Of a stretch of DNA of 64,000 nucleotides, positions 114-57,195 are shown piece by piece. The notes under the pieces were generated by a model that saw only the letters and a list, made by a program, of their open reading frames with translations, made no database searches and had not been told where the DNA came from. The stretch spans positions 186,001-250,000 of the IMG/VR virus record IMGVR_UViG_3300008261_000001, one strand, 5' to 3'. A program made the position numbers and the translations under genes. The first letter of the stretch is position 1; each line of letters begins with the position of its first letter.

Positions 114-220
114 TTTATCTCCTTCTGTTGCCCACCTTATATGGTGGCTTCGAGGTTGACAATAACTTTCTTTATAGGAAAGTTGTGTAAACGATGGTAT
201 AATCCCATCGATGGTTCTAT

Positions 221-293
221 GCGACTATAGCTCAGTTGGTAGAGCATCGGTCTTACACACCGAATGTCACAGGTTCAAGCCCTGTTGGTCGCA
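221..293 (+). tRNA. tRNA-Val(TAC)
   Basis: Cloverleaf; anticodon arm TCGGT-CTTACAC-ACCGA; GGTTCAAGCCC T-arm; TGGTATAAT extended -10 at about 195. Confidence 0.95.
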
Positions 294-353
294 GTCTGAT
301 ACCCACAATCCCGTGGGTACAGAGCATACCCGCCTGGGTTGTGCGTGTTGTGG

Positions 354-3467: not shown

Positions 3468-6104
3468 TTATTCTGTAAAGAGGGCGGTTATATCCCTTCC
3501 ACTATATTTAACCACAAAAGGCTTACCTGCTTGCTCTTTTATCCAATCAGCCACCATTTTGGCGGTGTGTTCAGATAAGTCTTTGACCTCATAGGTGGGC
3601 TTTGGTGGCTCTACAGGCTTAGGTGGAGGTGCAGGCTTGGGGTCTGGCTTCTTTCCACCGAAGATACGGATAAGATCCTCGCTTCCTTCCCCATTGAGTA
3701 CATCGCGTAGGTTGTCTTCGACCGTCCAATCTTTCCCTATCTCTACATCAACGGTGAGGGGTACATCCCAGTTCATGCGTTGGATAATCTTATTGCGAGT
3801 CATAAGCTCACAAAGCACAGGGACAGCTTCCGTTAACAAGTCCTTGTGTATCTCAAAGACGATTTCGTCGTGTACCGTAAGGATCATCTTAAAGCGGTCA
3901 AACCATCCATTCTTCTTGGCGGTTTTGTAGATGAGGCTCATGGCGAGCTTGGTTATATCCGCAGATGTACCTTGAACGGGTCCGTTCACAGCCTTGCGTT
4001 CGTCTTTAGAGCGGTTGCGGAAGTCTTTATCCTTTATGGAGGGCAAGGGCTGAACACGCCCCATAGCGGTCTTTACATATCCATTTTTCTTACCGAACTG
4101 ATGTTGGTGATCCCACCATGCGGTGAGTACATCGTAAGCCTTAGTGAAGAGCTTGTACTTTTCCTCGCCCTCTTCAGCCGTACAACCGATAGTGCGTTGA
4201 ACAGCTTTGCCCGTGCCACCATAGGATAGAGCGAAGTTGCACCCCTTTCCGTTTCCGCGTAGGGCTTTCCAATCTGGTCTGGACTTGGCAGACTCGCCAT
4301 AGAAGGCTACAGCGGTCACCGTGTGCAGATCACCGATCTTATCCGAGCCACAGACGCAGGTAGGAGGTGGTGCTTTACGGAAGCCCTGTTCGTCCATTTC
4401 TCTAGGGTACTGAGCCCCACACTCAGAACACTCGAAGAACGCCTTTATCCATTTAGGCTCACCCGATAGGTTGGTGACGAGGCGTAGCTCAACACCTGAA
4501 TAGTCTATCGCCACAAGATACCAATCTGGGTGCCTTACACCTATACACTTGCGTAGGTTAGAGATACACTCTGGCTTTGTTGGGTCGTATGTGGCGGGTA
4601 TGCCTTGAAATGGCACACGACACCCTCCGTCTTTGGTCTTTTTAGGGTCTGAAGTCGTCTTGCATGAGAAACGCCCTGTGTCAGCCGCGAACTGATCAAA
4701 CTTGGGCATGAGCGTTCCATCTTCAGCGACATCCTCAACAAAGGGAATAAGGTACTGACCGAGGGACTTTCCAAGCATACGGAAGCGTTTGACCTTTTCC
4801 ATAAATGGAAAAGTCTCGCTCGCCTTCTTAATGACCTCGTCTAGAACATCTGCCGATGTTGCGACTTGTCCAGATTTCTCTGTGGCGATGAGGTTGGGTA
4901 CGCCCAGCTCTCTGAATAATAAACCAAGCTGTTGAGGGCTCAACAAGTCGTACACAAGGGGGAAGTCCACATCTTCCATACCTCTACCCTCTTCCTCGCT
5001 GTACATCTCAATCTCTCCATCTTCATTTGTTTTAAAAGATGCAGTACTGAGCTTAGTGACGGATTTGGATAGTGACCCCTTAATGTCTGGGTACATACGA
5101 TCCGCTTCCTTGCGGGCTTCGTCTACACGGATTTTGTAGTTGTACCCATTTCCGACTTCCATGTGGTCAAAGCGATTAAGACCCTTTATGTCCCCCTTAA
5201 GAAGCCTAATGTAGTTTGGCATGATATCACGCCCTACGATTTCGCTCGCACCTGCATACACCTCTAAGAGAGAGTCAAACCACTCGCGTTGACCATCTTG
5301 ACAGAAGCGTAGGGCGGTCTTTTGATCCACATAGACACGATTACGATGAACCCACCGCACCGACACGAGAGTGGACTTCTCAAGAGCGTAGATGGTGTTG
5401 GTGTGGTATCCGCTGTTGGTGTACTGCTTATTGAGAACTTCAAATAAGCCGAGGGTACACATAGCGTCAGACGCTCCGTACCACTTACACGGCTCCCATG
5501 ATGGGTCTAGCTTGGAGAAGTTTTTATTCGGGCTGTCTGGCATGAGGTCATCAAGCTCAATCATCTCACGCTGTAGTAGCTCGTTGCTGAGATGCTTTAA
5601 GCCTCGTCCGCCTTTGGTGCGGGGGTCTAGCAGATACTTGAGAATATAGGTGTCGTGCCACTTACCACTATCCCAACGAGCTTCACCTAGTCCCTTATGA
5701 TATCCATTAAACTCAAGTACCTCTTGGTCGAATCCAGCGTTATGAAATATAGGCTGTGCTTCAACGGATAGGTCAAACAAACGCTCTAGAGCAGGTCCCA
5801 TGAGCCTCCACGGAACATTGTATTCAGAACCCTCTTGGTGAGCTATCGGAAAGTAATAGCCCCTGTTCTTTGTGGGGGCAAGGCACACGCCTACAACAGA
5901 CTCCCTTGTTCTGCCGTTGAACACCCTCAGATCAAGACCTGTTGTCTCAGTATCCAATCCATAGACTTTATCTGGTGCGTTGATACACTCGTTTATGGCT
6001 TGGTCTAGGTTTTCTCTAGTGCCGAGGATTAACTCACAGTCTTTCATCCACGACTTCTGCGTTATGTTCGGTCGCCTTAACGCCTCTAGCATATCCATTA
6101 ACAT
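3468..6104 (-). CDS. polA: family A DNA polymerase with 3'-5' exonuclease domain
   Basis: ExoI LDTETTG, ExoII FHNAGFD, ExoIII YGASDA; motif A DYSGVELR, motif B KGCNFALSYG, NGPVQGTSAD, motif C VHDEIV. Confidence 0.97.
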   Translation of the reverse strand: MLMDMLEALRRPNITQKSWMKDCELILGTRENLDQAINECINAPDKVYGLDTETTGLDLRVFNGRTRESVVGVCLAPTKNRGYYFPIAHQEGSEYNVPWRLMGPALERLFDLSVEAQPIFHNAGFDQEVLEFNGYHKGLGEARWDSGKWHDTYILKYLLDPRTKGGRGLKHLSNELLQREMIELDDLMPDSPNKNFSKLDPSWEPCKWYGASDAMCTLGLFEVLNKQYTNSGYHTNTIYALEKSTLVSVRWVHRNRVYVDQKTALRFCQDGQREWFDSLLEVYAGASEIVGRDIMPNYIRLLKGDIKGLNRFDHMEVGNGYNYKIRVDEARKEADRMYPDIKGSLSKSVTKLSTASFKTNEDGEIEMYSEEEGRGMEDVDFPLVYDLLSPQQLGLLFRELGVPNLIATEKSGQVATSADVLDEVIKKASETFPFMEKVKRFRMLGKSLGQYLIPFVEDVAEDGTLMPKFDQFAADTGRFSCKTTSDPKKTKDGGCRVPFQGIPATYDPTKPECISNLRKCIGVRHPDWYLVAIDYSGVELRLVTNLSGEPKWIKAFFECSECGAQYPREMDEQGFRKAPPPTCVCGSDKIGDLHTVTAVAFYGESAKSRPDWKALRGNGKGCNFALSYGGTGKAVQRTIGCTAEEGEEKYKLFTKAYDVLTAWWDHQHQFGKKNGYVKTAMGRVQPLPSIKDKDFRNRSKDERKAVNGPVQGTSADITKLAMSLIYKTAKKNGWFDRFKMILTVHDEIVFEIHKDLLTEAVPVLCELMTRNKIIQRMNWDVPLTVDVEIGKDWTVEDNLRDVLNGEGSEDLIRIFGGKKPDPKPAPPPKPVEPPKPTYEVKDLSEHTAKMVADWIKEQAGKPFVVKYSGRDITALFTE

Positions 6105-18567: not shown

Positions 18568-19977
18568 TTACTTGTACTTACGCATAGAGGCTATTTTACG
18601 AGAGGCTACGCGAGAGGGGTTTATGTTGAAAGGCAGTACCTCAAAGTTTCCATTTTCATCGAACCCTGTGTATTGAAGAACCTCTAGCTGACAGATTGTG
18701 TCTTCTCCGTCTTTATTTACGAAGCGTTTCTCGTAGCCCAAGAAGTCTACATCATCTGGGATAAGGTAAACCGTCATTTTTCTTTCTAGTGGGTCGAACA
18801 TGATTTGAGAAGTTGAGTAGAGACCATCGGGTACTTTACGGACAGGAATAAAAGGGTCGTCCATTTTATCCCATCTGTATCCGTAGAGGGCGGGAGCCGC
18901 TTCTGAAATGTCTGTCACATTGGATAATATTTCTGTGGCTAGTTCTCTTCTGCGTAAAGAGCTATGTCTGTCGTCCCCCACTTGATAACCTGCGTCTGGG
19001 TGGTTTATGCCGTGATTGGTGCGGACATGGAGTTTGTTTCTTTGGAGTGTCTTAACGATGGGCTGATGGATAGAGGTTTGCTCTATAATCCTAGCTCTTT
19101 TGCCGTCAGTAATAATGGTGTGACCATGAACTGGAACATGAAAGGAGTTACCTTTTATGCAGTCCATAGCATCGTCTATGTTTTTGCATTTGAGTGCGTT
19201 CAATAAATAGTACCCATCCTCTGACATACGAGGTTCTTTGGATAGGTTGCGTGTCTGACCCTCTTTTTCGTCTTCACGCACATTTAGAGCCGAGTTAACA
19301 ATAGATATTCCGTAGCTGTTAATACCTTCGAGCCAGCCTGTCACATTGTCTATGTAGTAAAGCACCTCCACACCATCGTACATATCGTGATAGACTTTAA
19401 TCTCTGGGTTGTAGTTTCTATCCCTCACTTTGACTAGATAACGCTGATCGTTTAGATCAAGGCAAGATATAACGCAAGCGGTCTTCTTACGCATGGCTTT
19501 CCTCACTATATTGGATACTTTGGGTGTTGTGGGGGTTAGGCTAGACTTCTTTTTGAAGTGCTTTTCCTTCCATGCTTTCCATTTAGCGTGGGCGGGGCTA
19601 GACTTGAGAGAGGGGTCATGCCCCCAGTTTCTTAGACTTATTTCCCACTTGGACATACCGCTGTCTTTTACTGGGTCTCCAGGCTTGCCTCCCATCATCC
19701 TTCCATTGAATCCATTTTCTTGAGCAGCGTTGTCGAAGTCTTGAGCCGTCCAATCTTCAAAAGGCTTTTCTTTACGCCTTTTGATTCTATGGAAAGAGTC
19801 GTACCCAGATTGGATATCTCCACTATCTTTGGCTTCTTCCCGACTGAAAGAGGCTAGAAGCCTTCGGTCATCTTCTGCCCAGTTATCCAATGCGGTCTGA
19901 CTCATGTTAATGAGGTCATGCCACTTGTCGTAGATTTCTTTTTTCTCTTCTTCAGTTCGAGCTTTTGCATATCTCAT
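18568..19977 (-). CDS. DUF3140-like domain fused to Ntn-hydrolase (C45/C59-like) domain
   Basis: LINMS..SLRNWGHDP, then CVI..KVRDRNY..EGINSYGISIVNSAL..RTNHG. Confidence 0.75.
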   Translation of the reverse strand: MRYAKARTEEEKKEIYDKWHDLINMSQTALDNWAEDDRRLLASFSREEAKDSGDIQSGYDSFHRIKRRKEKPFEDWTAQDFDNAAQENGFNGRMMGGKPGDPVKDSGMSKWEISLRNWGHDPSLKSSPAHAKWKAWKEKHFKKKSSLTPTTPKVSNIVRKAMRKKTACVISCLDLNDQRYLVKVRDRNYNPEIKVYHDMYDGVEVLYYIDNVTGWLEGINSYGISIVNSALNVREDEKEGQTRNLSKEPRMSEDGYYLLNALKCKNIDDAMDCIKGNSFHVPVHGHTIITDGKRARIIEQTSIHQPIVKTLQRNKLHVRTNHGINHPDAGYQVGDDRHSSLRRRELATEILSNVTDISEAAPALYGYRWDKMDDPFIPVRKVPDGLYSTSQIMFDPLERKMTVYLIPDDVDFLGYEKRFVNKDGEDTICQLEVLQYTGFDENGNFEVLPFNINPSRVASRKIASMRKYK

Positions 19978-26035: not shown

Positions 26036-26878
26036 TTATCTACGCCCAGGTCTCTCTTCAGGAGCCCTCTTGATGCTAGGGGAGTCCATCCACTCCTCTC
26101 TATACCTCTTGTTGTACTCCTTCTTGTTTTTGGATACGCCTGATCCATAGGGGTTATGGAGGCGATAACAGGTTTCACCCTCACCAGGCTTGCCGACACC
26201 TTCCCAATTGTCGTCTGAGTAGCAATCGGGCTGATTCTTTGGAGCAGGTGGCTTGTTGTAGTTCTTTTGGTCGCCCTTGCCGTCCCAAGTACGACCTGCG
26301 AACATCTCGTCCGCCTCTAACTCGTCCGCCCACATCTCGTCTGAGAAACGCTCTAGGCTCGCCCTCCTTCTCCTTTGTACATCGTCATCGTCATCGTCCT
26401 CGTCATAATCTTCCTCGACATAGTAGTGCATTTTATTTCGTTCATTACTTTCTTCCTCGGCTATCGGTTCTACATAAAGCATCTCTGCGATGTGTTTGGT
26501 AAACCCAGCCACCTTCTTCAGAAACTTAGAACCAACCTCACCTCTGCTCTCGTCATAAACTACTTTGTCTGTGTCTGCGTTTATGATTCGAAACCCATAT
26601 CTGGTACCAGTCTGAAACAGATCAAAAATCACTGCCAGATTTCCGTTAATGACCGTGATTGAAGCACTTGACTTGTTGTGTTTTAGCTCTCGGCTACTTG
26701 AGGGGAACACGATGTCTGTATCTACCCTCTCTTTTAACAGTTTACTTACTTCTTTCTCTAAGAATGCTTGTGTCTTTTTAGCGAGATCCGCGAAAAAAGG
26801 GTTCAAGGATCCCCCTTGCTCAAGGCGGGCGATCCTCATCTCTAACTCATGTAAAACTTCACTGGCTGTTCTTCTCAT
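26036..26878 (-). CDS. RTAS-leader family protein
   Basis: Likely start ATG 26878 (MRRTASEVLHELEMRIARLE) after GGAG RBS. Confidence 0.75.
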   Translation of the reverse strand: MRRTASEVLHELEMRIARLEQGGSLNPFFADLAKKTQAFLEKEVSKLLKERVDTDIVFPSSSRELKHNKSSASITVINGNLAVIFDLFQTGTRYGFRIINADTDKVVYDESRGEVGSKFLKKVAGFTKHIAEMLYVEPIAEEESNERNKMHYYVEEDYDEDDDDDDVQRRRRASLERFSDEMWADELEADEMFAGRTWDGKGDQKNYNKPPAPKNQPDCYSDDNWEGVGKPGEGETCYRLHNPYGSGVSKNKKEYNKRYREEWMDSPSIKRAPEERPGRR

Positions 26879-26885
26879 GTTTATC

Positions 26886-26939
26886 AACTCCATAGAGGGG
26901 GTTGTAGTTTTCCCCTCTATGGAGTTAATAAACAAACTA
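26886..26939 (-). promoter_or_regulatory. TTTAT box plus RBS-occluding hairpin
   Basis: Sense TAGTTTGTTTAT followed by a 15-bp stem AACTCCATAGAGGGG/CCCCTCTATGGAGTT containing GGAG. Confidence 0.7.
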
Positions 26940-27125
26940 TTAGCGAACACGCTCCCAAGAAGCCGTCTTAACCTCGACACGAACAACGCTCGTTCCCTCG
27001 TTATCCTTTAAGAGCTTCTTAGCTTCACGAGCGGTGTTTCTGCTTGTAAAGAAAGTTCCACTTGGGGTGGTGGCTAGGCTCCCGTCTGCAAGCAATATCG
27101 CGTACACATAGGTCGTATCAGACAT
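26940..27125 (-). CDS. hypothetical protein
   Basis: AGGAGGAG RBS; TGGTATA -10. Confidence 0.65.
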   Translation of the reverse strand: MSDTTYVYAILLADGSLATTPSGTFFTSRNTAREAKKLLKDNEGTSVVRVEVKTASWERVR

Positions 27126-28300: not shown

Positions 28301-28383
28301 AGTCGTTCTCCTTCTAGGTCTTATTTATAGTATTTTAATACTTATTAGTGGGGGAAGCACTTACCTACAAAGGAGTTTCAAAC

Positions 28384-52855: not shown

Positions 52856-53896
52856 ATGAGTAAAGACTTACAGATCGCATATGCGTGTCCGCATTTGATA
52901 CGATATGAAAGAGTTTCTTTGGACAGCGGTCGGTTTGTATCTGCCTCTAGTCCCATAGAGGGGGATAACCTACTTGTTCTTAGACGAGATGGTGTCGAAC
53001 TGCCCGCTGAGGGACTCTTTAGGGAAGCATTTATCCAATGCCCTCTCAAAGGTCCTTATCGGATAAAGACGGATAAGAACTCTCTTACGCTTGTCTTGGA
53101 GGGTGGTGCTACATATCAGGTGTCTATCCCACCTAAGATTTACAGCACTACGGCACTCGTGACTTTACTTAATGGAAAGTTCGGTGAGATTTCTGTTTTG
53201 GAGGATAACTTATCGGTTCGTTTTACGGATGAGCAAAGGGGTGTTGGTTTTAGTCTTTATGGGACAGCGATGGAGAGCTTGGGTTTTGTGGTATCCAAAG
53301 TCAGAGCAAAGCCTTTACGCCTAACGCCCTCTTGGAAACTGCGGAAAAGCACAACTGGGGGTTATTTAGTAGCTTTCGATAAGCCTCTCGATCCGGAGGG
53401 CTTATTAGATGTCACCTATACGACCACAAAGAGCGAATGTCGTAGGTGCAACGCCACTGGGGTGGAGAACGACATAAGGTTCTCTATGGATGGTGATTTA
53501 TCCACAATAGAGGGTTATGACTTATTGTATCAGAACATAGCAAAGACGCTTTTGACCATACAAGGGAGCAATCCTTATCACGAGTGGTATGGGTCGAACG
53601 CTGTAGGTTTGGTGGGTAAGAAGTCCACCACTGCTTTACCTTCTCTGATCCGACAGAGCGTTAAAGAGGCATTGGATAGATTTCAGGGTCTTCAGCGAGA
53701 GCAGGCGAAGTTACAGAGGGTATCTAATGAGGAACGCTTATTGAGCGTAGACAGCGTGACGGTGGAACGCATAGGGTCAGATGAGACATCTGTCTTGTGT
53801 ACGGTCGTCGTTCGGGCGGCAAGTGGTTCGCCCGTTAACATAAACATTGTGTTTGCTGTACCTGGCAGTATTCCACTTGATGGAGATCTAAGATGA
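52856..53896 (+). CDS. baseplate wedge protein with gp25/GPW-like C-terminal domain
   Basis: LLTIQGSNPYHEWYGS..EERLLSVDSV; precedes baseplate J-like gene. Confidence 0.8.
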   Translation: MSKDLQIAYACPHLIRYERVSLDSGRFVSASSPIEGDNLLVLRRDGVELPAEGLFREAFIQCPLKGPYRIKTDKNSLTLVLEGGATYQVSIPPKIYSTTALVTLLNGKFGEISVLEDNLSVRFTDEQRGVGFSLYGTAMESLGFVVSKVRAKPLRLTPSWKLRKSTTGGYLVAFDKPLDPEGLLDVTYTTTKSECRRCNATGVENDIRFSMDGDLSTIEGYDLLYQNIAKTLLTIQGSNPYHEWYGSNAVGLVGKKSTTALPSLIRQSVKEALDRFQGLQREQAKLQRVSNEERLLSVDSVTVERIGSDETSVLCTVVVRAASGSPVNINIVFAVPGSIPLDGDLR

Positions 53897-56800
53897 GCCT
53901 TTTTGAAATAATCAAACCTGATGGGGTTAAGACTTCCAATCCCTCTGTCGTTTACTCTACTCTCAAAGACGAAGTGACCATTAGGGGTAACATCGAGGGA
54001 TACACGAGTATCGTCATAACTTTTAATGGAACCACCTACACTTCCACCGGTATAGACTCAGATATAAGCATATTGGATAACTCTTGGTTATTCCCATCTG
54101 TTGGTGGTATAGACATCACTCAAGGTACGAACTCTTTTGAGATAGTAGCCTCAGGTGTGGGTTTATCCAATAAGTCCATACGGCTAGACATAGTATCTCC
54201 AGAGAACGAGCAGATATCTCCACCTGCTCCACCCACGAACATCAGAGTTTCTCGTCTCCAAAACGCTGTAGAGATTTCTTTTAACCACTCGGACACATCC
54301 GTGAGCTATTACAATGTGTATGGCTCATCAGCAAGTGGTGGGGGTCTTAATGGATACTTTTTGGTAAACGCGGTTCCTTTAGATCCAGTGACTTACGGTG
54401 TGCGTGTTGAGCAGTCTACAACACTTGGTGACTTGAGTGTGGATTTGAGTCCACAAGATGCCGACCCTTTATTTGTGGGGGTGCAGGCGTTGCAGAGTTC
54501 TAGTTCTCAAACCTTATCTACTACTAGCTTGGGGGATATTGAGATTCCAGAGGGTGCTATAAGGGTGAGGGTTACCTCTGTGGTTTCTTCTCTAACTCTT
54601 AATGAGACAGTTAAGTTTAAGCACTCTAGGACAGCCACCCCCAACTCACAACCACCGACCTATCAGATAGGTGAGTTCTCGACCTTACCCGCGACTACTC
54701 CCATTTATTATGTGGTCACAGCAGTTAAAGTGGCTGACGATGTTGAGATAGAGTCCTCTTACAGCATAGAAGTGGCAGGACAGCCCATAGAGGTTCAATC
54801 CACCAATCTGAGCCTCCCCAATGTATCGGATAACGACATCACAACGAGTCTTATCCAATCAATCTACGCGGCGGACGAGGATGCGAGCGTTCAAGCTGGG
54901 TCTGCCATCCGAGACTTGATGATAGACCCTATGGTGTCTGAGCTATCTAGGGTGCGTTTTGTGTTGGACTACACCTATCGAGCCACGAGCTTTTTGAGCC
55001 TATTACGGATAGACGACCCCTTAAACACAGGTGCTTCCATTTCTGTGTCTGCGAGTTCTTACAAGCTCGCTCTGAAAGACGCTTTGTTTTTACAAACGGA
55101 TGCTCAGACACAGAACCTCATAGACTCTTCCTTTGACCGACTTGCCTCTAACTTTGGCTTGTCCCGCAGAATAGGCGTAAAGGCGAGGGGAGAGGTGGTG
55201 TTTTATGTTTCCGCTAAACCCACCTACACTATATCAGTTCCTCTAGGGACAGTTCTGACAGGCGGTGGAGTTTCCTTTAAGACGACTGAAACGGATAGCT
55301 TTAGTCCAGAGAACGCATCGAGCCTCTACAACCCTATCCGTAAACGATATGAGCTTACTTTACAAATAGAGGCGATAAATGAGGGTTCAAGCGGAAATGT
55401 AACGAGCGGTCAGATCACACAAGGTGCTCCAGCAGGGTTGAGGGTTTCCAATACCGCACCAACTTTTGGGGGACAAGACACAGAGAGCAATAGTGATCTG
55501 TCCGCAAGAGCTTTGGGTTATTTATCTTCTGTGGATGTCGGCACTCGTAATGGATACTATCGCGTAGCACGAGAGACAGCAGGTGTATCCTCCGTCCTCA
55601 TTATTGACGCAGACAGCCCCTACATGGTCAGAGATGATGGGATCGGTGGCAAAGTGGATGTGTGGGTAAGGGGTGAGAGCATAGCGAGTGTCACCGATGT
55701 GTACGCCCCCACCTACAAAACCAAACGCGGTGCTAGGTTCTTGCCCCTCATTAGCGAGGGGGCTTACATCTTCAAAGTGGCAGACATCTCGTCCCCCTCT
55801 ATCTTTGAAATGATCGACAGAGAGGACTTGGGTCTTGGACTCCGTAACGCCACCACAAATGAGTTCTTCGACTTATCCAATGTGGTCATATCTAATGGGA
55901 ATACAATCACATTGGATAGTTCGATAGTACAGCCCTCTTATGTGTTTGGGGATGTGATACTAGGTGACTATAGGTCTAGCACCTCGGCAAATATCGTCTT
56001 AGATAGACAGCCTGTAAGAGAAGTCTTATCCGTGGCGAAAGAAGATGGGACACTCTTGGGTTTTGAGTTTGTTAAAGCTGAAGACCCCTTGAGGCTTGGG
56101 CAGTCAACTAGAGCTTCCGATTATGTGGTGGTGACGAATGATGGTTTGGATAAGTTTAAAGAAGTCTCCCAAGAGTCTCATACGCTCATAGGATTTTACG
56201 GAGACCGTTTAGCCTATTTGGGTGTCGATGTGAACAGCATAGTGGTGACGAACACATCGGGTGTTGTGTTCGATAGCCCTCTCGACCCAAGTGTTTCCCA
56301 ACCCCATTATGAGATCATCTCAGAAGTCGATCAGGTTTCTATACGCAGAACGAGCGTCAGTGGCGGTATAGCAGATGGGCAGATAGTGCTAGTCTCTTAT
56401 CGTTACATAGAGAATATCACCATCACCTACAAGACGAACCTCGTTTTATCCAATCTACAATCAAACCTAGATGCGAATAAGCACTTAGGGGCGGATGTAT
56501 TGGCTAAAGAGGTTTCTCCAGTATTTGTGGACATCAAAGCTGTGGTGGTCTTAGAGCGGGGTACACCCATCTCCACAGCGGACTCCCTCATACGCAACAA
56601 CTTATCCAATCTTATCTTAGGGCAAGTACTCGGTGGGACGCTGAGAGTCTCAGATGTCATTAGGGAGATAGATAGCAGTACAGGCGTTAGCTATGTCATC
56701 ATGCCTCTCACACAACTCGCTCTACAGCAAGGGTCTAGTGTACTAAGAGAAGAAATCTTAGTGGGTTCTCTCCGAAACATCACCCAACTTAACAACCCAA

Positions 56801-57195
56801 CACATAACTTATGGTTATTGGATAGCCCTTTATCCAATGTGGTGGGGGTCGGAGGGGGTGCGACCGCTCGTGTGTTTTTAGATGGAGCGGAGATACCCCT
56901 CTTGAGCGTCTCACAGAGGGGACTCAAATCAAATTGGATAACCACGAGTGCATCGCTCATAGGTTTGGAGGGGTTGAGTGTTTACGACTCAACTATCTCT
57001 GCGTATGTGAACATAACAGCGAGCCAAAATAAGGTTTTGTTGTGTTTGCCTATAGGCGATCACCCTAGCAATCATCTTCTGAGTGCCAACTACACAACTG
57101 GAGACTCCACAGGTGTGGTGTCGGACATAGTGGTGAACGAGTTTTCTTATTTACAAGTGGGCGACTTGAGCTTTACTTACGAGGAGGAACGATGA
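53893..57195 (+). CDS. baseplate J/gp6-like wedge protein with Fn3-like N-terminus
   Basis: FDRLASNFGLSR..ARGEV..GSSGNV..GGQDTESNSDLSAR. Confidence 0.88.
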   Translation: MSLFEIIKPDGVKTSNPSVVYSTLKDEVTIRGNIEGYTSIVITFNGTTYTSTGIDSDISILDNSWLFPSVGGIDITQGTNSFEIVASGVGLSNKSIRLDIVSPENEQISPPAPPTNIRVSRLQNAVEISFNHSDTSVSYYNVYGSSASGGGLNGYFLVNAVPLDPVTYGVRVEQSTTLGDLSVDLSPQDADPLFVGVQALQSSSSQTLSTTSLGDIEIPEGAIRVRVTSVVSSLTLNETVKFKHSRTATPNSQPPTYQIGEFSTLPATTPIYYVVTAVKVADDVEIESSYSIEVAGQPIEVQSTNLSLPNVSDNDITTSLIQSIYAADEDASVQAGSAIRDLMIDPMVSELSRVRFVLDYTYRATSFLSLLRIDDPLNTGASISVSASSYKLALKDALFLQTDAQTQNLIDSSFDRLASNFGLSRRIGVKARGEVVFYVSAKPTYTISVPLGTVLTGGGVSFKTTETDSFSPENASSLYNPIRKRYELTLQIEAINEGSSGNVTSGQITQGAPAGLRVSNTAPTFGGQDTESNSDLSARALGYLSSVDVGTRNGYYRVARETAGVSSVLIIDADSPYMVRDDGIGGKVDVWVRGESIASVTDVYAPTYKTKRGARFLPLISEGAYIFKVADISSPSIFEMIDREDLGLGLRNATTNEFFDLSNVVISNGNTITLDSSIVQPSYVFGDVILGDYRSSTSANIVLDRQPVREVLSVAKEDGTLLGFEFVKAEDPLRLGQSTRASDYVVVTNDGLDKFKEVSQESHTLIGFYGDRLAYLGVDVNSIVVTNTSGVVFDSPLDPSVSQPHYEIISEVDQVSIRRTSVSGGIADGQIVLVSYRYIENITITYKTNLVLSNLQSNLDANKHLGADVLAKEVSPVFVDIKAVVVLERGTPISTADSLIRNNLSNLILGQVLGGTLRVSDVIREIDSSTGVSYVIMPLTQLALQQGSSVLREEILVGSLRNITQLNNPTHNLWLLDSPLSNVVGVGGGATARVFLDGAEIPLLSVSQRGLKSNWITTSASLIGLEGLSVYDSTISAYVNITASQNKVLLCLPIGDHPSNHLLSANYTTGDSTGVVSDIVVNEFSYLQVGDLSFTYEEER

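What the first reader, a model, noticed from the sequence alone, without database searches (positions are those of the whole stretch)
18568..19977. Polyprotein in which the putative [KR]xA cut site would expose an Ntn-hydrolase catalytic Cys
Seen: a DUF3140-like domain, a basic linker, then RKKTA|CVI (Cys codon 19474-19476) starting an Ntn-hydrolase-like domain; the C-terminus has RVASRKIAS. Known: Ntn hydrolases need an N-terminal nucleophile. Inference: cleavage at the same motif seen in the leader family would release two proteins and activate the enzyme during head maturation. This independently supports cleavage after Ala, though autoprocessing is an alternative.
Basis: partly seen in the sequence, partly recalled or inferred. 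Interest (0 to 1): 0.62.

Follow-up and report, generated by a model that had tools for sequence, protein, structure and literature searches.

The report
Phage polyprotein carrying a masked Ntn hydrolase
A freshwater jumbo phage encodes a two-part protein whose second half is an amide-cleaving enzyme that works only once a cut frees its first cysteine, and comparison with relatives suggests the phage's own capsid-maturation protease makes that cut.

Summary
Window 18568-19977 (minus strand) is one 469-aa ORF: a DUF3140-family helical module (1-~140), a Lys-rich linker, RKKTA|C168, a Cys-Ntn hydrolase domain and a tail with RVAS and KIAS. An AlphaFold model (pLDDT 89.7) superposes on NAAA, acid ceramidase, PVA, BSH and IAT at Z 15-19. 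Cys168 falls on the first residue of their mature chains. Seven of the 29 protein-search homologues and most of IMG/VR loci L053-L069 start M-C. Every other homologue has one of two tripeptides before the Cys. One is [KR]-x-[A/S/G], in jumbo-phage contigs that carry this genome's type of prohead protease and its MRTASEVLRSLE leader family. The other is x-x-E, nearly always [I/L/M/V]-x-E, in T4-like contigs that carry a Peptidase_S77 (gp21-type) protease, which cuts after Glu. In this genome [KR]-x-[A/S] is also 11-fold enriched just after the leader of 13 of 14 leader proteins. The two modules are separate, syntenic genes in most relatives and are fused repeatedly. The fusion is intact in four independent metagenomes. 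Cleavage by the prohead protease is therefore the best-supported reading (about 0.55). It remains unproven. Autoprocessing, the rule for this enzyme superfamily, remains the main rival (about 0.3). A ribosome-binding site and ATG at M162 may also allow separate translation.

The parts
18568..19977 (-). Whole ORF, 469 aa plus stop (P0002): DUF3140-like module, linker, Cys-Ntn hydrolase, basic tail
   Evidence: the same ORF in a second IMG/VR contig (L010) and in 4 independent metagenome runs without indels
19558..19977 (-). Residues 1-140: all-helical DUF3140-family module. In most relatives it is a separate ~155-aa gene, 60-82% identical
   Evidence: AF2 pLDDT >90 over most of 7-140; no solved-structure relative (best Z 4.1)
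19477..19557 (-). Residues 141-167: Lys-rich linker, low pLDDT, with [KR]-x-A sites R159-K-A and K165-T-A
19492..19504 (-). Shine-Dalgarno-like GAGGA (19504-19500), 5-nt spacer (AAGCC), ATG of Met162 (19494-19492): the retained, possibly still used, start of the once-separate hydrolase gene
   Evidence: an SD core precedes 48% of predicted starts but 14% of internal in-frame ATGs; relatives start M-x-[KR]-x-A-C at this point
19474..19485 (-). K165-T166-A167 | C168: proposed scissile bond and the Ntn nucleophile codon (19476-19474)
18622..19476 (-). Residues 168-452: Cys-Ntn amidohydrolase domain (AAT/NAAA/CBAH fold). Invariant D210, E217, D236, E299, V-R-T-N-H-G 318-323, S339, R343; near-invariant C168, K183, R185-D186-R187
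18571..18621 (-). Residues 453-469: basic C-terminal tail with R456-V-A-S and K461-I-A-S. N-P-x-[KR]-[IV]-A-S is conserved in close homologues, and in L021 it is internal, followed by a further ~200-aa domain

Best explanation
The gene encodes a two-module polyprotein of a roughly 290-kb freshwater jumbo phage. Its C-terminal module is a Cys-Ntn amidohydrolase. It is a zymogen, because the catalytic Cys168 must become the free N-terminus. Most likely the protein is taken into the prohead and cut there by the phage's prohead protease (461 aa, G000:154859-156244, outside the window). The cuts fall after [KR]-x-[A/S/G]: K165-T-A|C168, probably also R159-K-A, and the tail sites R456-V-A|S and K461-I-A|S. 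This separates the DUF3140-like module from the enzyme and switches the enzyme on at head maturation, ready to be delivered with the DNA. Shown: domain make-up, the fold, the nucleophile position, conservation of the pre-Cys motif, its association with protease type, and the reality of the fusion. Inferred: that this protease has [KR]-x-[A/S/G] specificity, that the protein is packaged, and that the enzyme is ejected. The substrate is unknown; it would be an amide bond.
For: Model residue 9 (Cys168) aligns with residue 1 of mature NAAA beta (C126), acid ceramidase beta (C143), PVA (C1), BSH (C2) and PGA beta (S1), at Z 15-19.4. Seven protein homologues and most IMG/VR loci L053-L069 begin M-C. 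All other homologues fall into two classes. There are 36 distinct [KR]-x-[A/S/G]|C sequences. There are 15 distinct x-x-E|C sequences, 14 of them [I/L/M/V]-x-E (three rows its script left under 'other' re-read). Background is 2.4% and 1.7% of tripeptides. Peptidase_S77 is found in 5 of 10 x-x-E contigs (E 1e-28 to 1e-31) and in 0 of 13 [KR]-x-A contigs. The x-x-E phage MA9V-1 also has it. This genome's protease type is found in 6 of 13 [KR]-x-A contigs and in no x-x-E contig. T4, phiKZ and SPN3US proteases cut after Glu, for example T4 Alt at ITE-6 and LTE-619 (PMC5694885). At least 14 proteins here share the leader MRTASEVLRSLExR[IVL]ARLE. [KR]-x-[A/S] is 11-fold enriched in the 10 residues after it (24/140 vs 1.6%, 13 of 14 proteins). 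The leader occurs in 5-27 copies in six related contigs and once in two more. It is absent from all T4-like and M-C contigs and from five other [KR]-x-A contigs. Some homologues carry a ~20-aa N-terminal tag (HRIAS...HIAS) ending R-E-A|C. The modules are fused and split repeatedly with the motif kept at each junction: DUF3140-HExxH-Ntn in L011, DUF3140-Ntn-RVAS-extra domain in L021, PAP2-Ntn-TopoIB-RVASRWL in L031. This genome has no HExxH homologue, so a built-in metallopeptidase is not the processor here.
Against: There are no proteomic or biochemical data. Every characterised propeptide-bearing Cys-Ntn hydrolase (IAT, PVA, NAAA, acid ceramidase) cuts itself. P0002 has no MRTASEV leader at its N-terminus, so packaging is inferred only from the RVAS/KIAS tail and from relatives. 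In the tree the [KR]-x-A class is one clade and the x-x-E class one or two, so the covariation amounts to very few independent events. Lys-rich N-termini are common for translational reasons and could explain part of the M-x-K-x-A pattern. An SD site plus ATG at Met162 suggests independent translation. The protease-linker co-fold gave no verdict.
Confidence: 0.55

Rival explanations
1. Autoproteolysis. As in IAT, penicillin V acylase, NAAA and acid ceramidase, the Cys168 thiol attacks the A167 carbonyl (N-to-S acyl shift) and the enzyme frees its own N-terminus. The prohead protease plays no part at this bond. The conserved tripeptide would then reflect requirements of self-cleavage or something else.
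For: The nearest structural relatives include precursor and self-activated forms of IAT, NAAA, acid ceramidase and PVA. The catalytic set is conserved. The enzyme family also exists in M-C form, needing only Met removal.
Against: Self-cleavage gives no reason for two sharply different pre-Cys motifs that each match the resident protease family. It also does not explain why the same [KR]-x-[A/S] follows an unrelated leader on 13 other proteins. P1 is Gly in IAT and PVA (from memory), not Ala/Ser with a basic P3 or Glu with an aliphatic P3.
Confidence: 0.3
2. Two products by internal initiation. The fusion is a recent stop-codon loss. The hydrolase is still translated from Met162 behind its own ribosome-binding site as M-R-K-K-T-A-C..., like its stand-alone relatives. 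The 469-aa form is a minor or neutral by-product. The five-residue propeptide must still be removed by one of the other two routes.
For: GAGGA lies 5 nt before ATG-162. An SD core is 3.4 times more frequent at real starts than at internal ATGs. L011 and L021 fusions also keep a Met 5-6 residues before the Cys, and stand-alone homologues start there.
Against: P0005, a separate fused lineage, has no Met before the Cys. The fusion is kept intact across independent samples. Fusions recur in at least three subclades. This reading does not by itself explain how the Cys is exposed.
Confidence: 0.1
3. A cytoplasmic, non-packaged enzyme. The RVAS-type tails and the [KR]-x-A motif are unrelated to capsid maturation, for example recognition by a host or other phage factor.
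For: P0002 has no N-terminal leader. It has no PHROG or structural-protein annotation. Class-B relatives combine the domain with kinase and nucleotidyltransferase modules that could act in the cytoplasm.
Against: Class-B polyproteins begin with leaders ending [LI]-x-E that resemble (from memory) the T4 capsid-targeting sequence. The tags sit at the termini of unrelated proteins in genomes rich in the leader family. The neighbouring genes include tail-fibre-like proteins.
Confidence: 0.05

Closest known systems
T4 internal proteins and Alt (capsid-targeting sequence removed by prohead protease gp21)
   Same: These are non-structural proteins or enzymes carried in the head. Short terminal peptides are cut off by the maturation protease at a three-residue motif. 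Alt is trimmed at both ends, at ITE-6 and LTE-619 (PMC9958956; PMC5694885). The T4-like relatives of this hydrolase have exactly such [ILMV]-x-E junctions and a gp21-type protease.
   Different: Here the proposed motif is [KR]-x-[A/S/G], not x-x-E. The protease does not reach the Peptidase_S77 model. The leader is a different, longer helix-like sequence. The cut would create the catalytic residue itself rather than merely remove a tag.
phiKZ / SPN3US ejection-protein propeptides
   Same: Jumbo phages in which many head-internal proteins carry propeptides removed at a short motif, often with several sites per propeptide (PMC5694885, PMC10052503).
   Different: Those proteases cut after Glu ([S/A/G]-x-E). 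No Ntn hydrolase cargo and no activation-by-cleavage of a cargo enzyme is described there.
Polyvalent proteins of phages and conjugative elements (Iyer et al. 2017, PMC5512222)
   Same: Unrelated effector domains are strung together in one polypeptide, predicted to be packaged and proteolytically released. Relatives here join PAP2, topoisomerase IB, zeta-toxin-like kinase, nucleotidyltransferase, HExxH and ChaC/GGACT modules to the hydrolase.
   Different: That survey does not mention Ntn hydrolases (0 occurrences). It stresses built-in metallopeptidases, whereas this genome has no HExxH module and the junction motif tracks the prohead protease instead.
Self-processing Cys-Ntn hydrolases: isopenicillin-N acyltransferase (PF03417), penicillin V acylase/BSH, NAAA, acid ceramidase
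   Same: Same fold. The nucleophile Cys is the first residue of a strand. Basic and acidic residues lie about 17-18 residues downstream. The precursor must be cut immediately before the Cys.
   Different: Only 10-17% identity, with no sequence-level PDB hit. The Pfam AAT score is just below threshold. The pre-Cys residues look like viral protease sites. The enzyme is embedded in phage polyproteins.

Membership tests
Cys-Ntn hydrolase superfamily (AAT/IAT, CBAH-PVA, NAAA/acid ceramidase) | Four-layer alpha-beta-beta-alpha fold | tested here: met
   AF2 model pLDDT 89.7; Foldseek E 9e-9 to IAT, 43 PDB hits at E<=1e-3, nearly all Ntn hydrolases or Ntn-fold proteins; VIA Z 19.4, rmsd 3.0, 201 aligned to NAAA beta
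Cys-Ntn hydrolase superfamily (AAT/IAT, CBAH-PVA, NAAA/acid ceramidase) | Nucleophile is the first residue of the mature chain, at the start of a central strand | tested here: met
   Model residue 9 = Cys168 aligns with chain residue C126 (6dxx_B), C143 (5u7z_B), C1 (3pva_A), C2 (BSH) and S1 (1jx9_B). The strand starts at model residue 10. Cys is near-invariant, and homologues start M-C.
Cys-Ntn hydrolase superfamily (AAT/IAT, CBAH-PVA, NAAA/acid ceramidase) | Conserved catalytic helpers (Arg/Asp about 17-20 residues after the nucleophile, oxyanion Asn) | tested here: inconclusive
   R185-D186-R187 and T-N-H-G 320-323 are (near-)invariant. No residue-by-residue superposition was available to prove equivalence.
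Cys-Ntn hydrolase superfamily (AAT/IAT, CBAH-PVA, NAAA/acid ceramidase) | Precursor is actually cleaved before the nucleophile | not testable with these tools
   Needs proteomics or expression.
Pfam PF03417 (AAT) | Score at or above the gathering threshold | tested here: not met
   22.7 bits against 23.2. A T4-like relative scores 23.1. Several homologues carry a precomputed PF03417 hit. It is best called a distant sister family.
Pfam PF11338 (DUF3140) | Score at or above the gathering threshold | tested here: not met
   13.9 bits against 25 for the window protein. 18 of 26 close homologues match at E<=0.01, best 4e-8.
Prohead-protease-processed head cargo (T4 CTS type) | Terminal targeting peptide shared with other cargo of the same phage | tested here: inconclusive
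   No MRTASEV leader at the N-terminus. The C-terminal RVAS/KIAS resembles the core R-x-A-S of the leader and the [KR]-[IV]-A-S-x-[YFW]-L tails of relatives.
Prohead-protease-processed head cargo (T4 CTS type) | Cleavage motif of the resident protease at the junction | tested here: inconclusive
   K-T-A|C fits the motif enriched after the leaders and kept in all clade members. The protease's specificity is itself inferred.
Prohead-protease-processed head cargo (T4 CTS type) | Presence in virions | not testable with these tools
   Uncultured phage. Twenty DNA runs hold the gene; no run on record as RNA holds it and no proteome data exist.
Polyvalent proteins (Iyer et al. 2017) | Two or more unrelated functional domains in one phage polypeptide | tested here: met
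   DUF3140-like plus Ntn hydrolase. Relatives have 3 or more domains.
Polyvalent proteins (Iyer et al. 2017) | Built-in processing peptidase (e.g. zincin/MPTase) | tested here: not met
   No HExxH homologue anywhere in the 290-kb genome. One is present in relatives L004 and L011-14 (weak Zincin_1 hit).

The most novel reading that the evidence does not exclude
A viral maturation protease creates the catalytic N-terminus of an Ntn hydrolase in trans. The capsid would then be the activation chamber for a packaged zymogen. The three residues before the Cys have been re-tuned whenever the gene moved between phage lineages with different proteases ([KR]-x-[A/S/G] versus [ILMV]-x-E). If so, the junction reveals the previously unknown, non-glutamate specificity of a widespread freshwater jumbo-phage protease clade. 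It also ties that clade to a new cargo-addressing system: the MRTASEVLRSLE leaders and the portable R-[VI]-A-S-x-aromatic-L tags.
Probability: 0.45. Interest if true: 0.75.

Novelty: new variant of a known kind. Interest (0 to 1): 0.62.

Why it matters
Ntn hydrolases are the textbook case of enzymes that activate themselves. An example where a second, viral protease makes the nucleophile would be a new activation logic. It would guarantee that a potentially harmful amidase becomes active only inside the sealed capsid. The finding also yields a testable cleavage rule ([KR]-x-[A/S/G]) for the prohead protease of an uncultured jumbo-phage clade that is common in freshwater (20 runs, 15 studies). 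It points to dozens of leader-tagged cargo proteins per genome. Finally, it shows that gene fusion and fission are nearly neutral when products are separated after translation.

Tried and rejected
- PHROGs gave no family for the protein.
- A sequence search of the PDB gave only spurious MvcA hits (E 0.04, linker region). A profile search gave only eS31 noise.
- tblastn against cultured phages found only two Chryseobacterium jumbo phages for the hydrolase. It found nothing for the N-terminal module and no near-identical DNA.
- Pfam models for T4 gp21 (PF03420), HK97 protease (PF04586), HK97 capsid (PF05065) and gp23 (PF07068) found nothing in this genome. The protease and capsid genes were found with PHROGs instead.
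- Fold searches for the DUF3140-like module found no relative (Foldseek best E 2.5; VIA wide best Z 4.1).
- The co-fold of the protease domain with linker residues 136-190 gave no verdict (score 0.39, a control scored 0.58). It is not evidence either way.
- The HExxH metallopeptidase of relatives was considered as the processor and rejected for this genome, because no homologue is present.
- Covariation was tested on a tree. The classes are clades, so it cannot be counted as many independent events.
- Literature searches for DUF3140, for Ntn hydrolases in virions, and for Ntn plus prohead found nothing relevant.
- The first related-loci run with the wide alignment failed for lack of a conserved block. 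It was repeated with a narrower alignment.

Full report
**What is there.** The coordinates enclose a single ORF on the minus strand (19977 down to 18568, 469 aa). The window is bases 186001-250000 of a 290,179-bp IMG/VR virus record that is 93% complete. This is a jumbo phage. It has a large terminase, a portal, a prohead protease (461 aa, phrog_18299) and a 292-aa major head protein (phrog_2522) at 145-160 kb. Near-identical copies of the gene occur in 20 sequencing runs from 15 freshwater, lake and drinking-water studies.

Contigs from four of those studies cover the domain junction with no indel and no stop. The only nearby change is T148A. A second IMG/VR contig carries the identical ORF (L010). 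The fusion is therefore real.

**Anatomy.**
- Residues 1-~140 form an all-helical module (AF2 pLDDT above 90 over most of 7-140).
- Residues 141-167 are a Lys-rich, low-confidence linker.
- Cys168 (codon 19476-19474) follows R-K-K-T-A.
- Residues 168-452 are the enzyme domain.
- Residues 453-469 are a basic tail containing R456-V-A-S and K461-I-A-S.

**The enzyme domain.** Pfam AAT (PF03417) scores 22.7 bits against a cut-off of 23.2. A model built on 29 sequences is confident (pLDDT 89.7, pTM 0.89). Foldseek finds isopenicillin-N acyltransferase (E 9e-9), bile-salt hydrolases, penicillin V acylases, NAAA and acid ceramidase. VIA-align gives Z 19.4 (rmsd 3.0, 201 residues) to NAAA beta and Z 15-19 to the others.

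In every mature chain the alignment begins at model residue 9, which is Cys168. That residue lies opposite the chain's first residue: C126 of human NAAA, C143 of acid ceramidase, C1 of PVA, C2 of BSH and S1 of penicillin G acylase beta. Cys168 is near-invariant among homologues. So are K183, R185-D186-R187, D210, E217 and V-R-T-N-H-G 318-323.

**The N-terminal module.** Alone it scores only E 0.075 against DUF3140. It has 45 homologues at 52-82% identity, mostly stand-alone proteins of 140-250 aa on phage-sized contigs. Of 26 aligned homologues, 18 match PF11338. No solved structure resembles it. Its function is unknown. It is far more conserved than the hydrolase, which is about 40% identical across the same set.

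**A fusion of neighbouring genes.** In at least 14 of the related IMG/VR loci the DUF3140-like gene lies upstream of the hydrolase on the same strand. It is either adjacent or separated by one gene. That intervening gene is an HExxH protein in L004 and L011-14.
- In L011-14 all three are one 909-aa ORF.
- In L021/22 the order is DUF3140, hydrolase, N-P-A-R-V-A-S, then a further ~200 aa.
- P0005 is a second DUF3140-hydrolase fusion.

On the tree these fusions sit in three different subclades. In the window, GAGGA lies 5 nt before ATG-162, five codons ahead of the Cys. Stand-alone relatives start at that point (M-N-K-S-A-C, M-K-K-Q-A-C). An SD core precedes 48% of predicted starts but only 14% of internal ATGs. 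The old start signal survives and may still work.

**The junction motif.** Twenty-nine protein homologues, the Chryseobacterium phage MA9V-1 protein and 64 IMG/VR loci were sorted by what precedes the Cys. A few loci could not be parsed.
- Class C proteins start M-C.
- Class A proteins have [KR]-x-[A/S/G]|C, with 36 distinct sequences.
- Class B proteins have x-x-E|C, with 15 distinct sequences. Fourteen of these are [I/L/M/V]-x-E and one is Q-S-E.

Apart from two M-C-clade rows (L052, with Ser at the nucleophile position, and L060, probably a non-ATG start), no homologue falls outside these classes. Background frequencies are 2.4% and 1.7% of tripeptides. Only 2.6% of the 870 cysteines in this genome follow [KR]-x-[A/S/G].

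**Link to the protease.** A Peptidase_S77 (T4 gp21) domain was found in 5 of 10 class-B contigs (E 1e-28 to 1e-31), in 0 of 13 class-A contigs and in 0 of 2 class-C contigs. It was also found in phage MA9V-1, whose homologue has L-N-E|C. This genome's protease type was found in 6 of 13 class-A contigs, including every one at least 63% complete, and in no class-B or class-C contig.

T4, phiKZ, 201phi2-1 and SPN3US proteases all cut after Glu. T4 Alt is cut at ITE-6 and LTE-619 (PMC5694885). Class-B proteins are 800-1500-aa polyproteins with zeta-toxin-like kinase and nucleotidyltransferase modules. Their N-terminal leaders end [LI]-x-E, which from memory resemble the T4 capsid-targeting sequence. 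The pre-Cys residues in that clade are therefore what a gp21-type protease would cut.

**The leader family.** At least 14 ORFs of this genome, five of them in the window, begin M-R-T-A-S-E-V-L-R-S-L-E-x-R-[IVL]-A-R-L-E. In the ten positions after L-E, [KR]-x-[A/S] occurs 24 times in 140. That compares with 1.6% in the proteome (binomial p about 7e-18, though paralogues are not independent). It is present in 13 of 14 proteins. The leader occurs in 5-27 copies in six class-A contigs and once in two more. It gave no match in five other class-A contigs, including two that carry this protease type, or in any class-B or class-C contig.

Shorter tags of the form [KR]-[IV]-A-S-x-[YFW]-L share the leader's R-x-A-S-x-hydrophobic-L core. 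They sit at the C-termini of stand-alone DUF3140-like proteins, of the HExxH protein and of the hydrolases. In other phages they sit at the N-terminus just before K-x-[A/S]. I could not decide whether R-V-A|S is itself cut or is an addressing element.

**Mechanism.** The best reading is that the polyprotein enters the prohead and is cut after [KR]-x-[A/S/G] by the prohead protease. The cut frees Cys168 and activates the amidase (confidence 0.55).
- The main rival is autoproteolysis (0.3). It is the rule in this superfamily, but it does not explain two lineage-specific, protease-like motifs.
- Internal initiation at Met162 (0.1) may contribute, but still needs a cut.
- A non-packaged enzyme seems unlikely (0.05).

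The evidence has limits. The tree shows class A as one clade and class B as one or two, so the covariation reflects few events. The protease's specificity is inferred. P0002 lacks the N-terminal leader. The co-fold test gave no verdict. The substrate is unknown. Fusions to ChaC/GGACT in some relatives hint at unusual amide bonds, but that is speculation.

**Comparison and novelty.** The system works like T4 internal proteins and Alt (PMC9958956), like phiKZ/SPN3US propeptides, and like the polyvalent proteins of Iyer et al. (PMC5512222). None of those describes an Ntn hydrolase cargo, a non-Glu motif, or a cut that creates the catalytic residue. Searches of the held literature found no description of this family. 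I rate it a new variant of a known kind.

Noticed in passing
window 26036-26986(-), 28348-29139(+), 29140-29877(-), 32975-33745(-), 42569-43690(-); nine more elsewhere in G000: A family of at least 14 otherwise unrelated ORFs shares the N-terminal leader MRTASEVLRSLExR[IVL]ARLE, followed by [KR]-x-[A/S]. The five window ones have no Pfam hit. Two of them (26036.., 28348..) probably start at an internal Met, at about 26878 and 28384. The leader occurs in up to 27 copies in a related 375-kb contig.
   Followed up: partly
G000:154859-156244 (locus L005:14859-16244), outside the window: The prohead protease (461 aa) is related to Bacillus phage G gp19, Tunturiibacter phage Tunturi_5, a 485-kb uncultured phage and cluster-C mycobacteriophage proteases. 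It does not reach Peptidase_S77 or S78. Its catalytic region carries a Cys-rich, zinc-ribbon-like insert (weak Pfam hit). It has V-R-V-A-S near its own N-terminus, an acidic linker and a long helical C-terminal part.
   Followed up: partly
L011:1207-3939; L021:2539-4470; L031:1969-4854: Relatives encode larger polyproteins around the same hydrolase: DUF3140-HExxH-Ntn (909 aa), DUF3140-Ntn-RVAS-extra domain (643 aa), and PAP2 phosphatase-Ntn-type IB topoisomerase ending RVASRWLFKELK (961 aa).
   Followed up: partly
L035:1906-6450, L044:2569-6633, L041:1906-5586, L033:2098-5010: In T4-like contigs the hydrolase sits inside 970-1515-aa proteins with AAA_33/zeta-toxin-like kinase and cytidylyltransferase-like modules. 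These proteins share a conserved C-terminal block, except in L033, and most have N-terminal leaders ending [LI]-x-E. They look like undescribed head-cargo polyvalent proteins.
   Followed up: partly
P0009, P0015, P0018; L026:2998-4422: Some hydrolase homologues carry a C-terminal ChaC/GGACT (gamma-glutamyl cyclotransferase-like) domain. This is a possible hint at the substrate class.
   Followed up: no
window 220-294, 809-881, 10554-11282, 46836-46908, 47271-47344: Nine tRNA genes lie in the window, including a cluster of five (Arg-CCU, Asn, Leu-UAA, Leu-GAG, Met).
   Followed up: no
window 53893-57195(+) and 57192-64000(+, runs on to G000:250547): Two overlapping giant ORFs of 1100 and 2451 aa. 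More ORFs of 1066-1862 aa follow just downstream in the genome. They were not analysed.
   Followed up: no
window 3468-6104(-): A family-A-like DNA polymerase (phrog_17, E 6e-94).
   Followed up: no
L052:3001-3738: One M-C-class homologue has Ser where the nucleophile Cys should be (M-S-I-I-A-C-K-Y against M-C-V-V-A-C-K-Y in L053). It could be a Ser-Ntn variant or an inactive copy.
   Followed up: no
window 19472-19492(-): The consensus scan flags a 7-bp stem (GCGTAAG...CTTGCGT) spanning the codons for R163 to V169, exactly over the junction. It is followed by a T-rich stretch. It is probably chance, since the number of such sites in the region is within that of shuffles.
   Followed up: no
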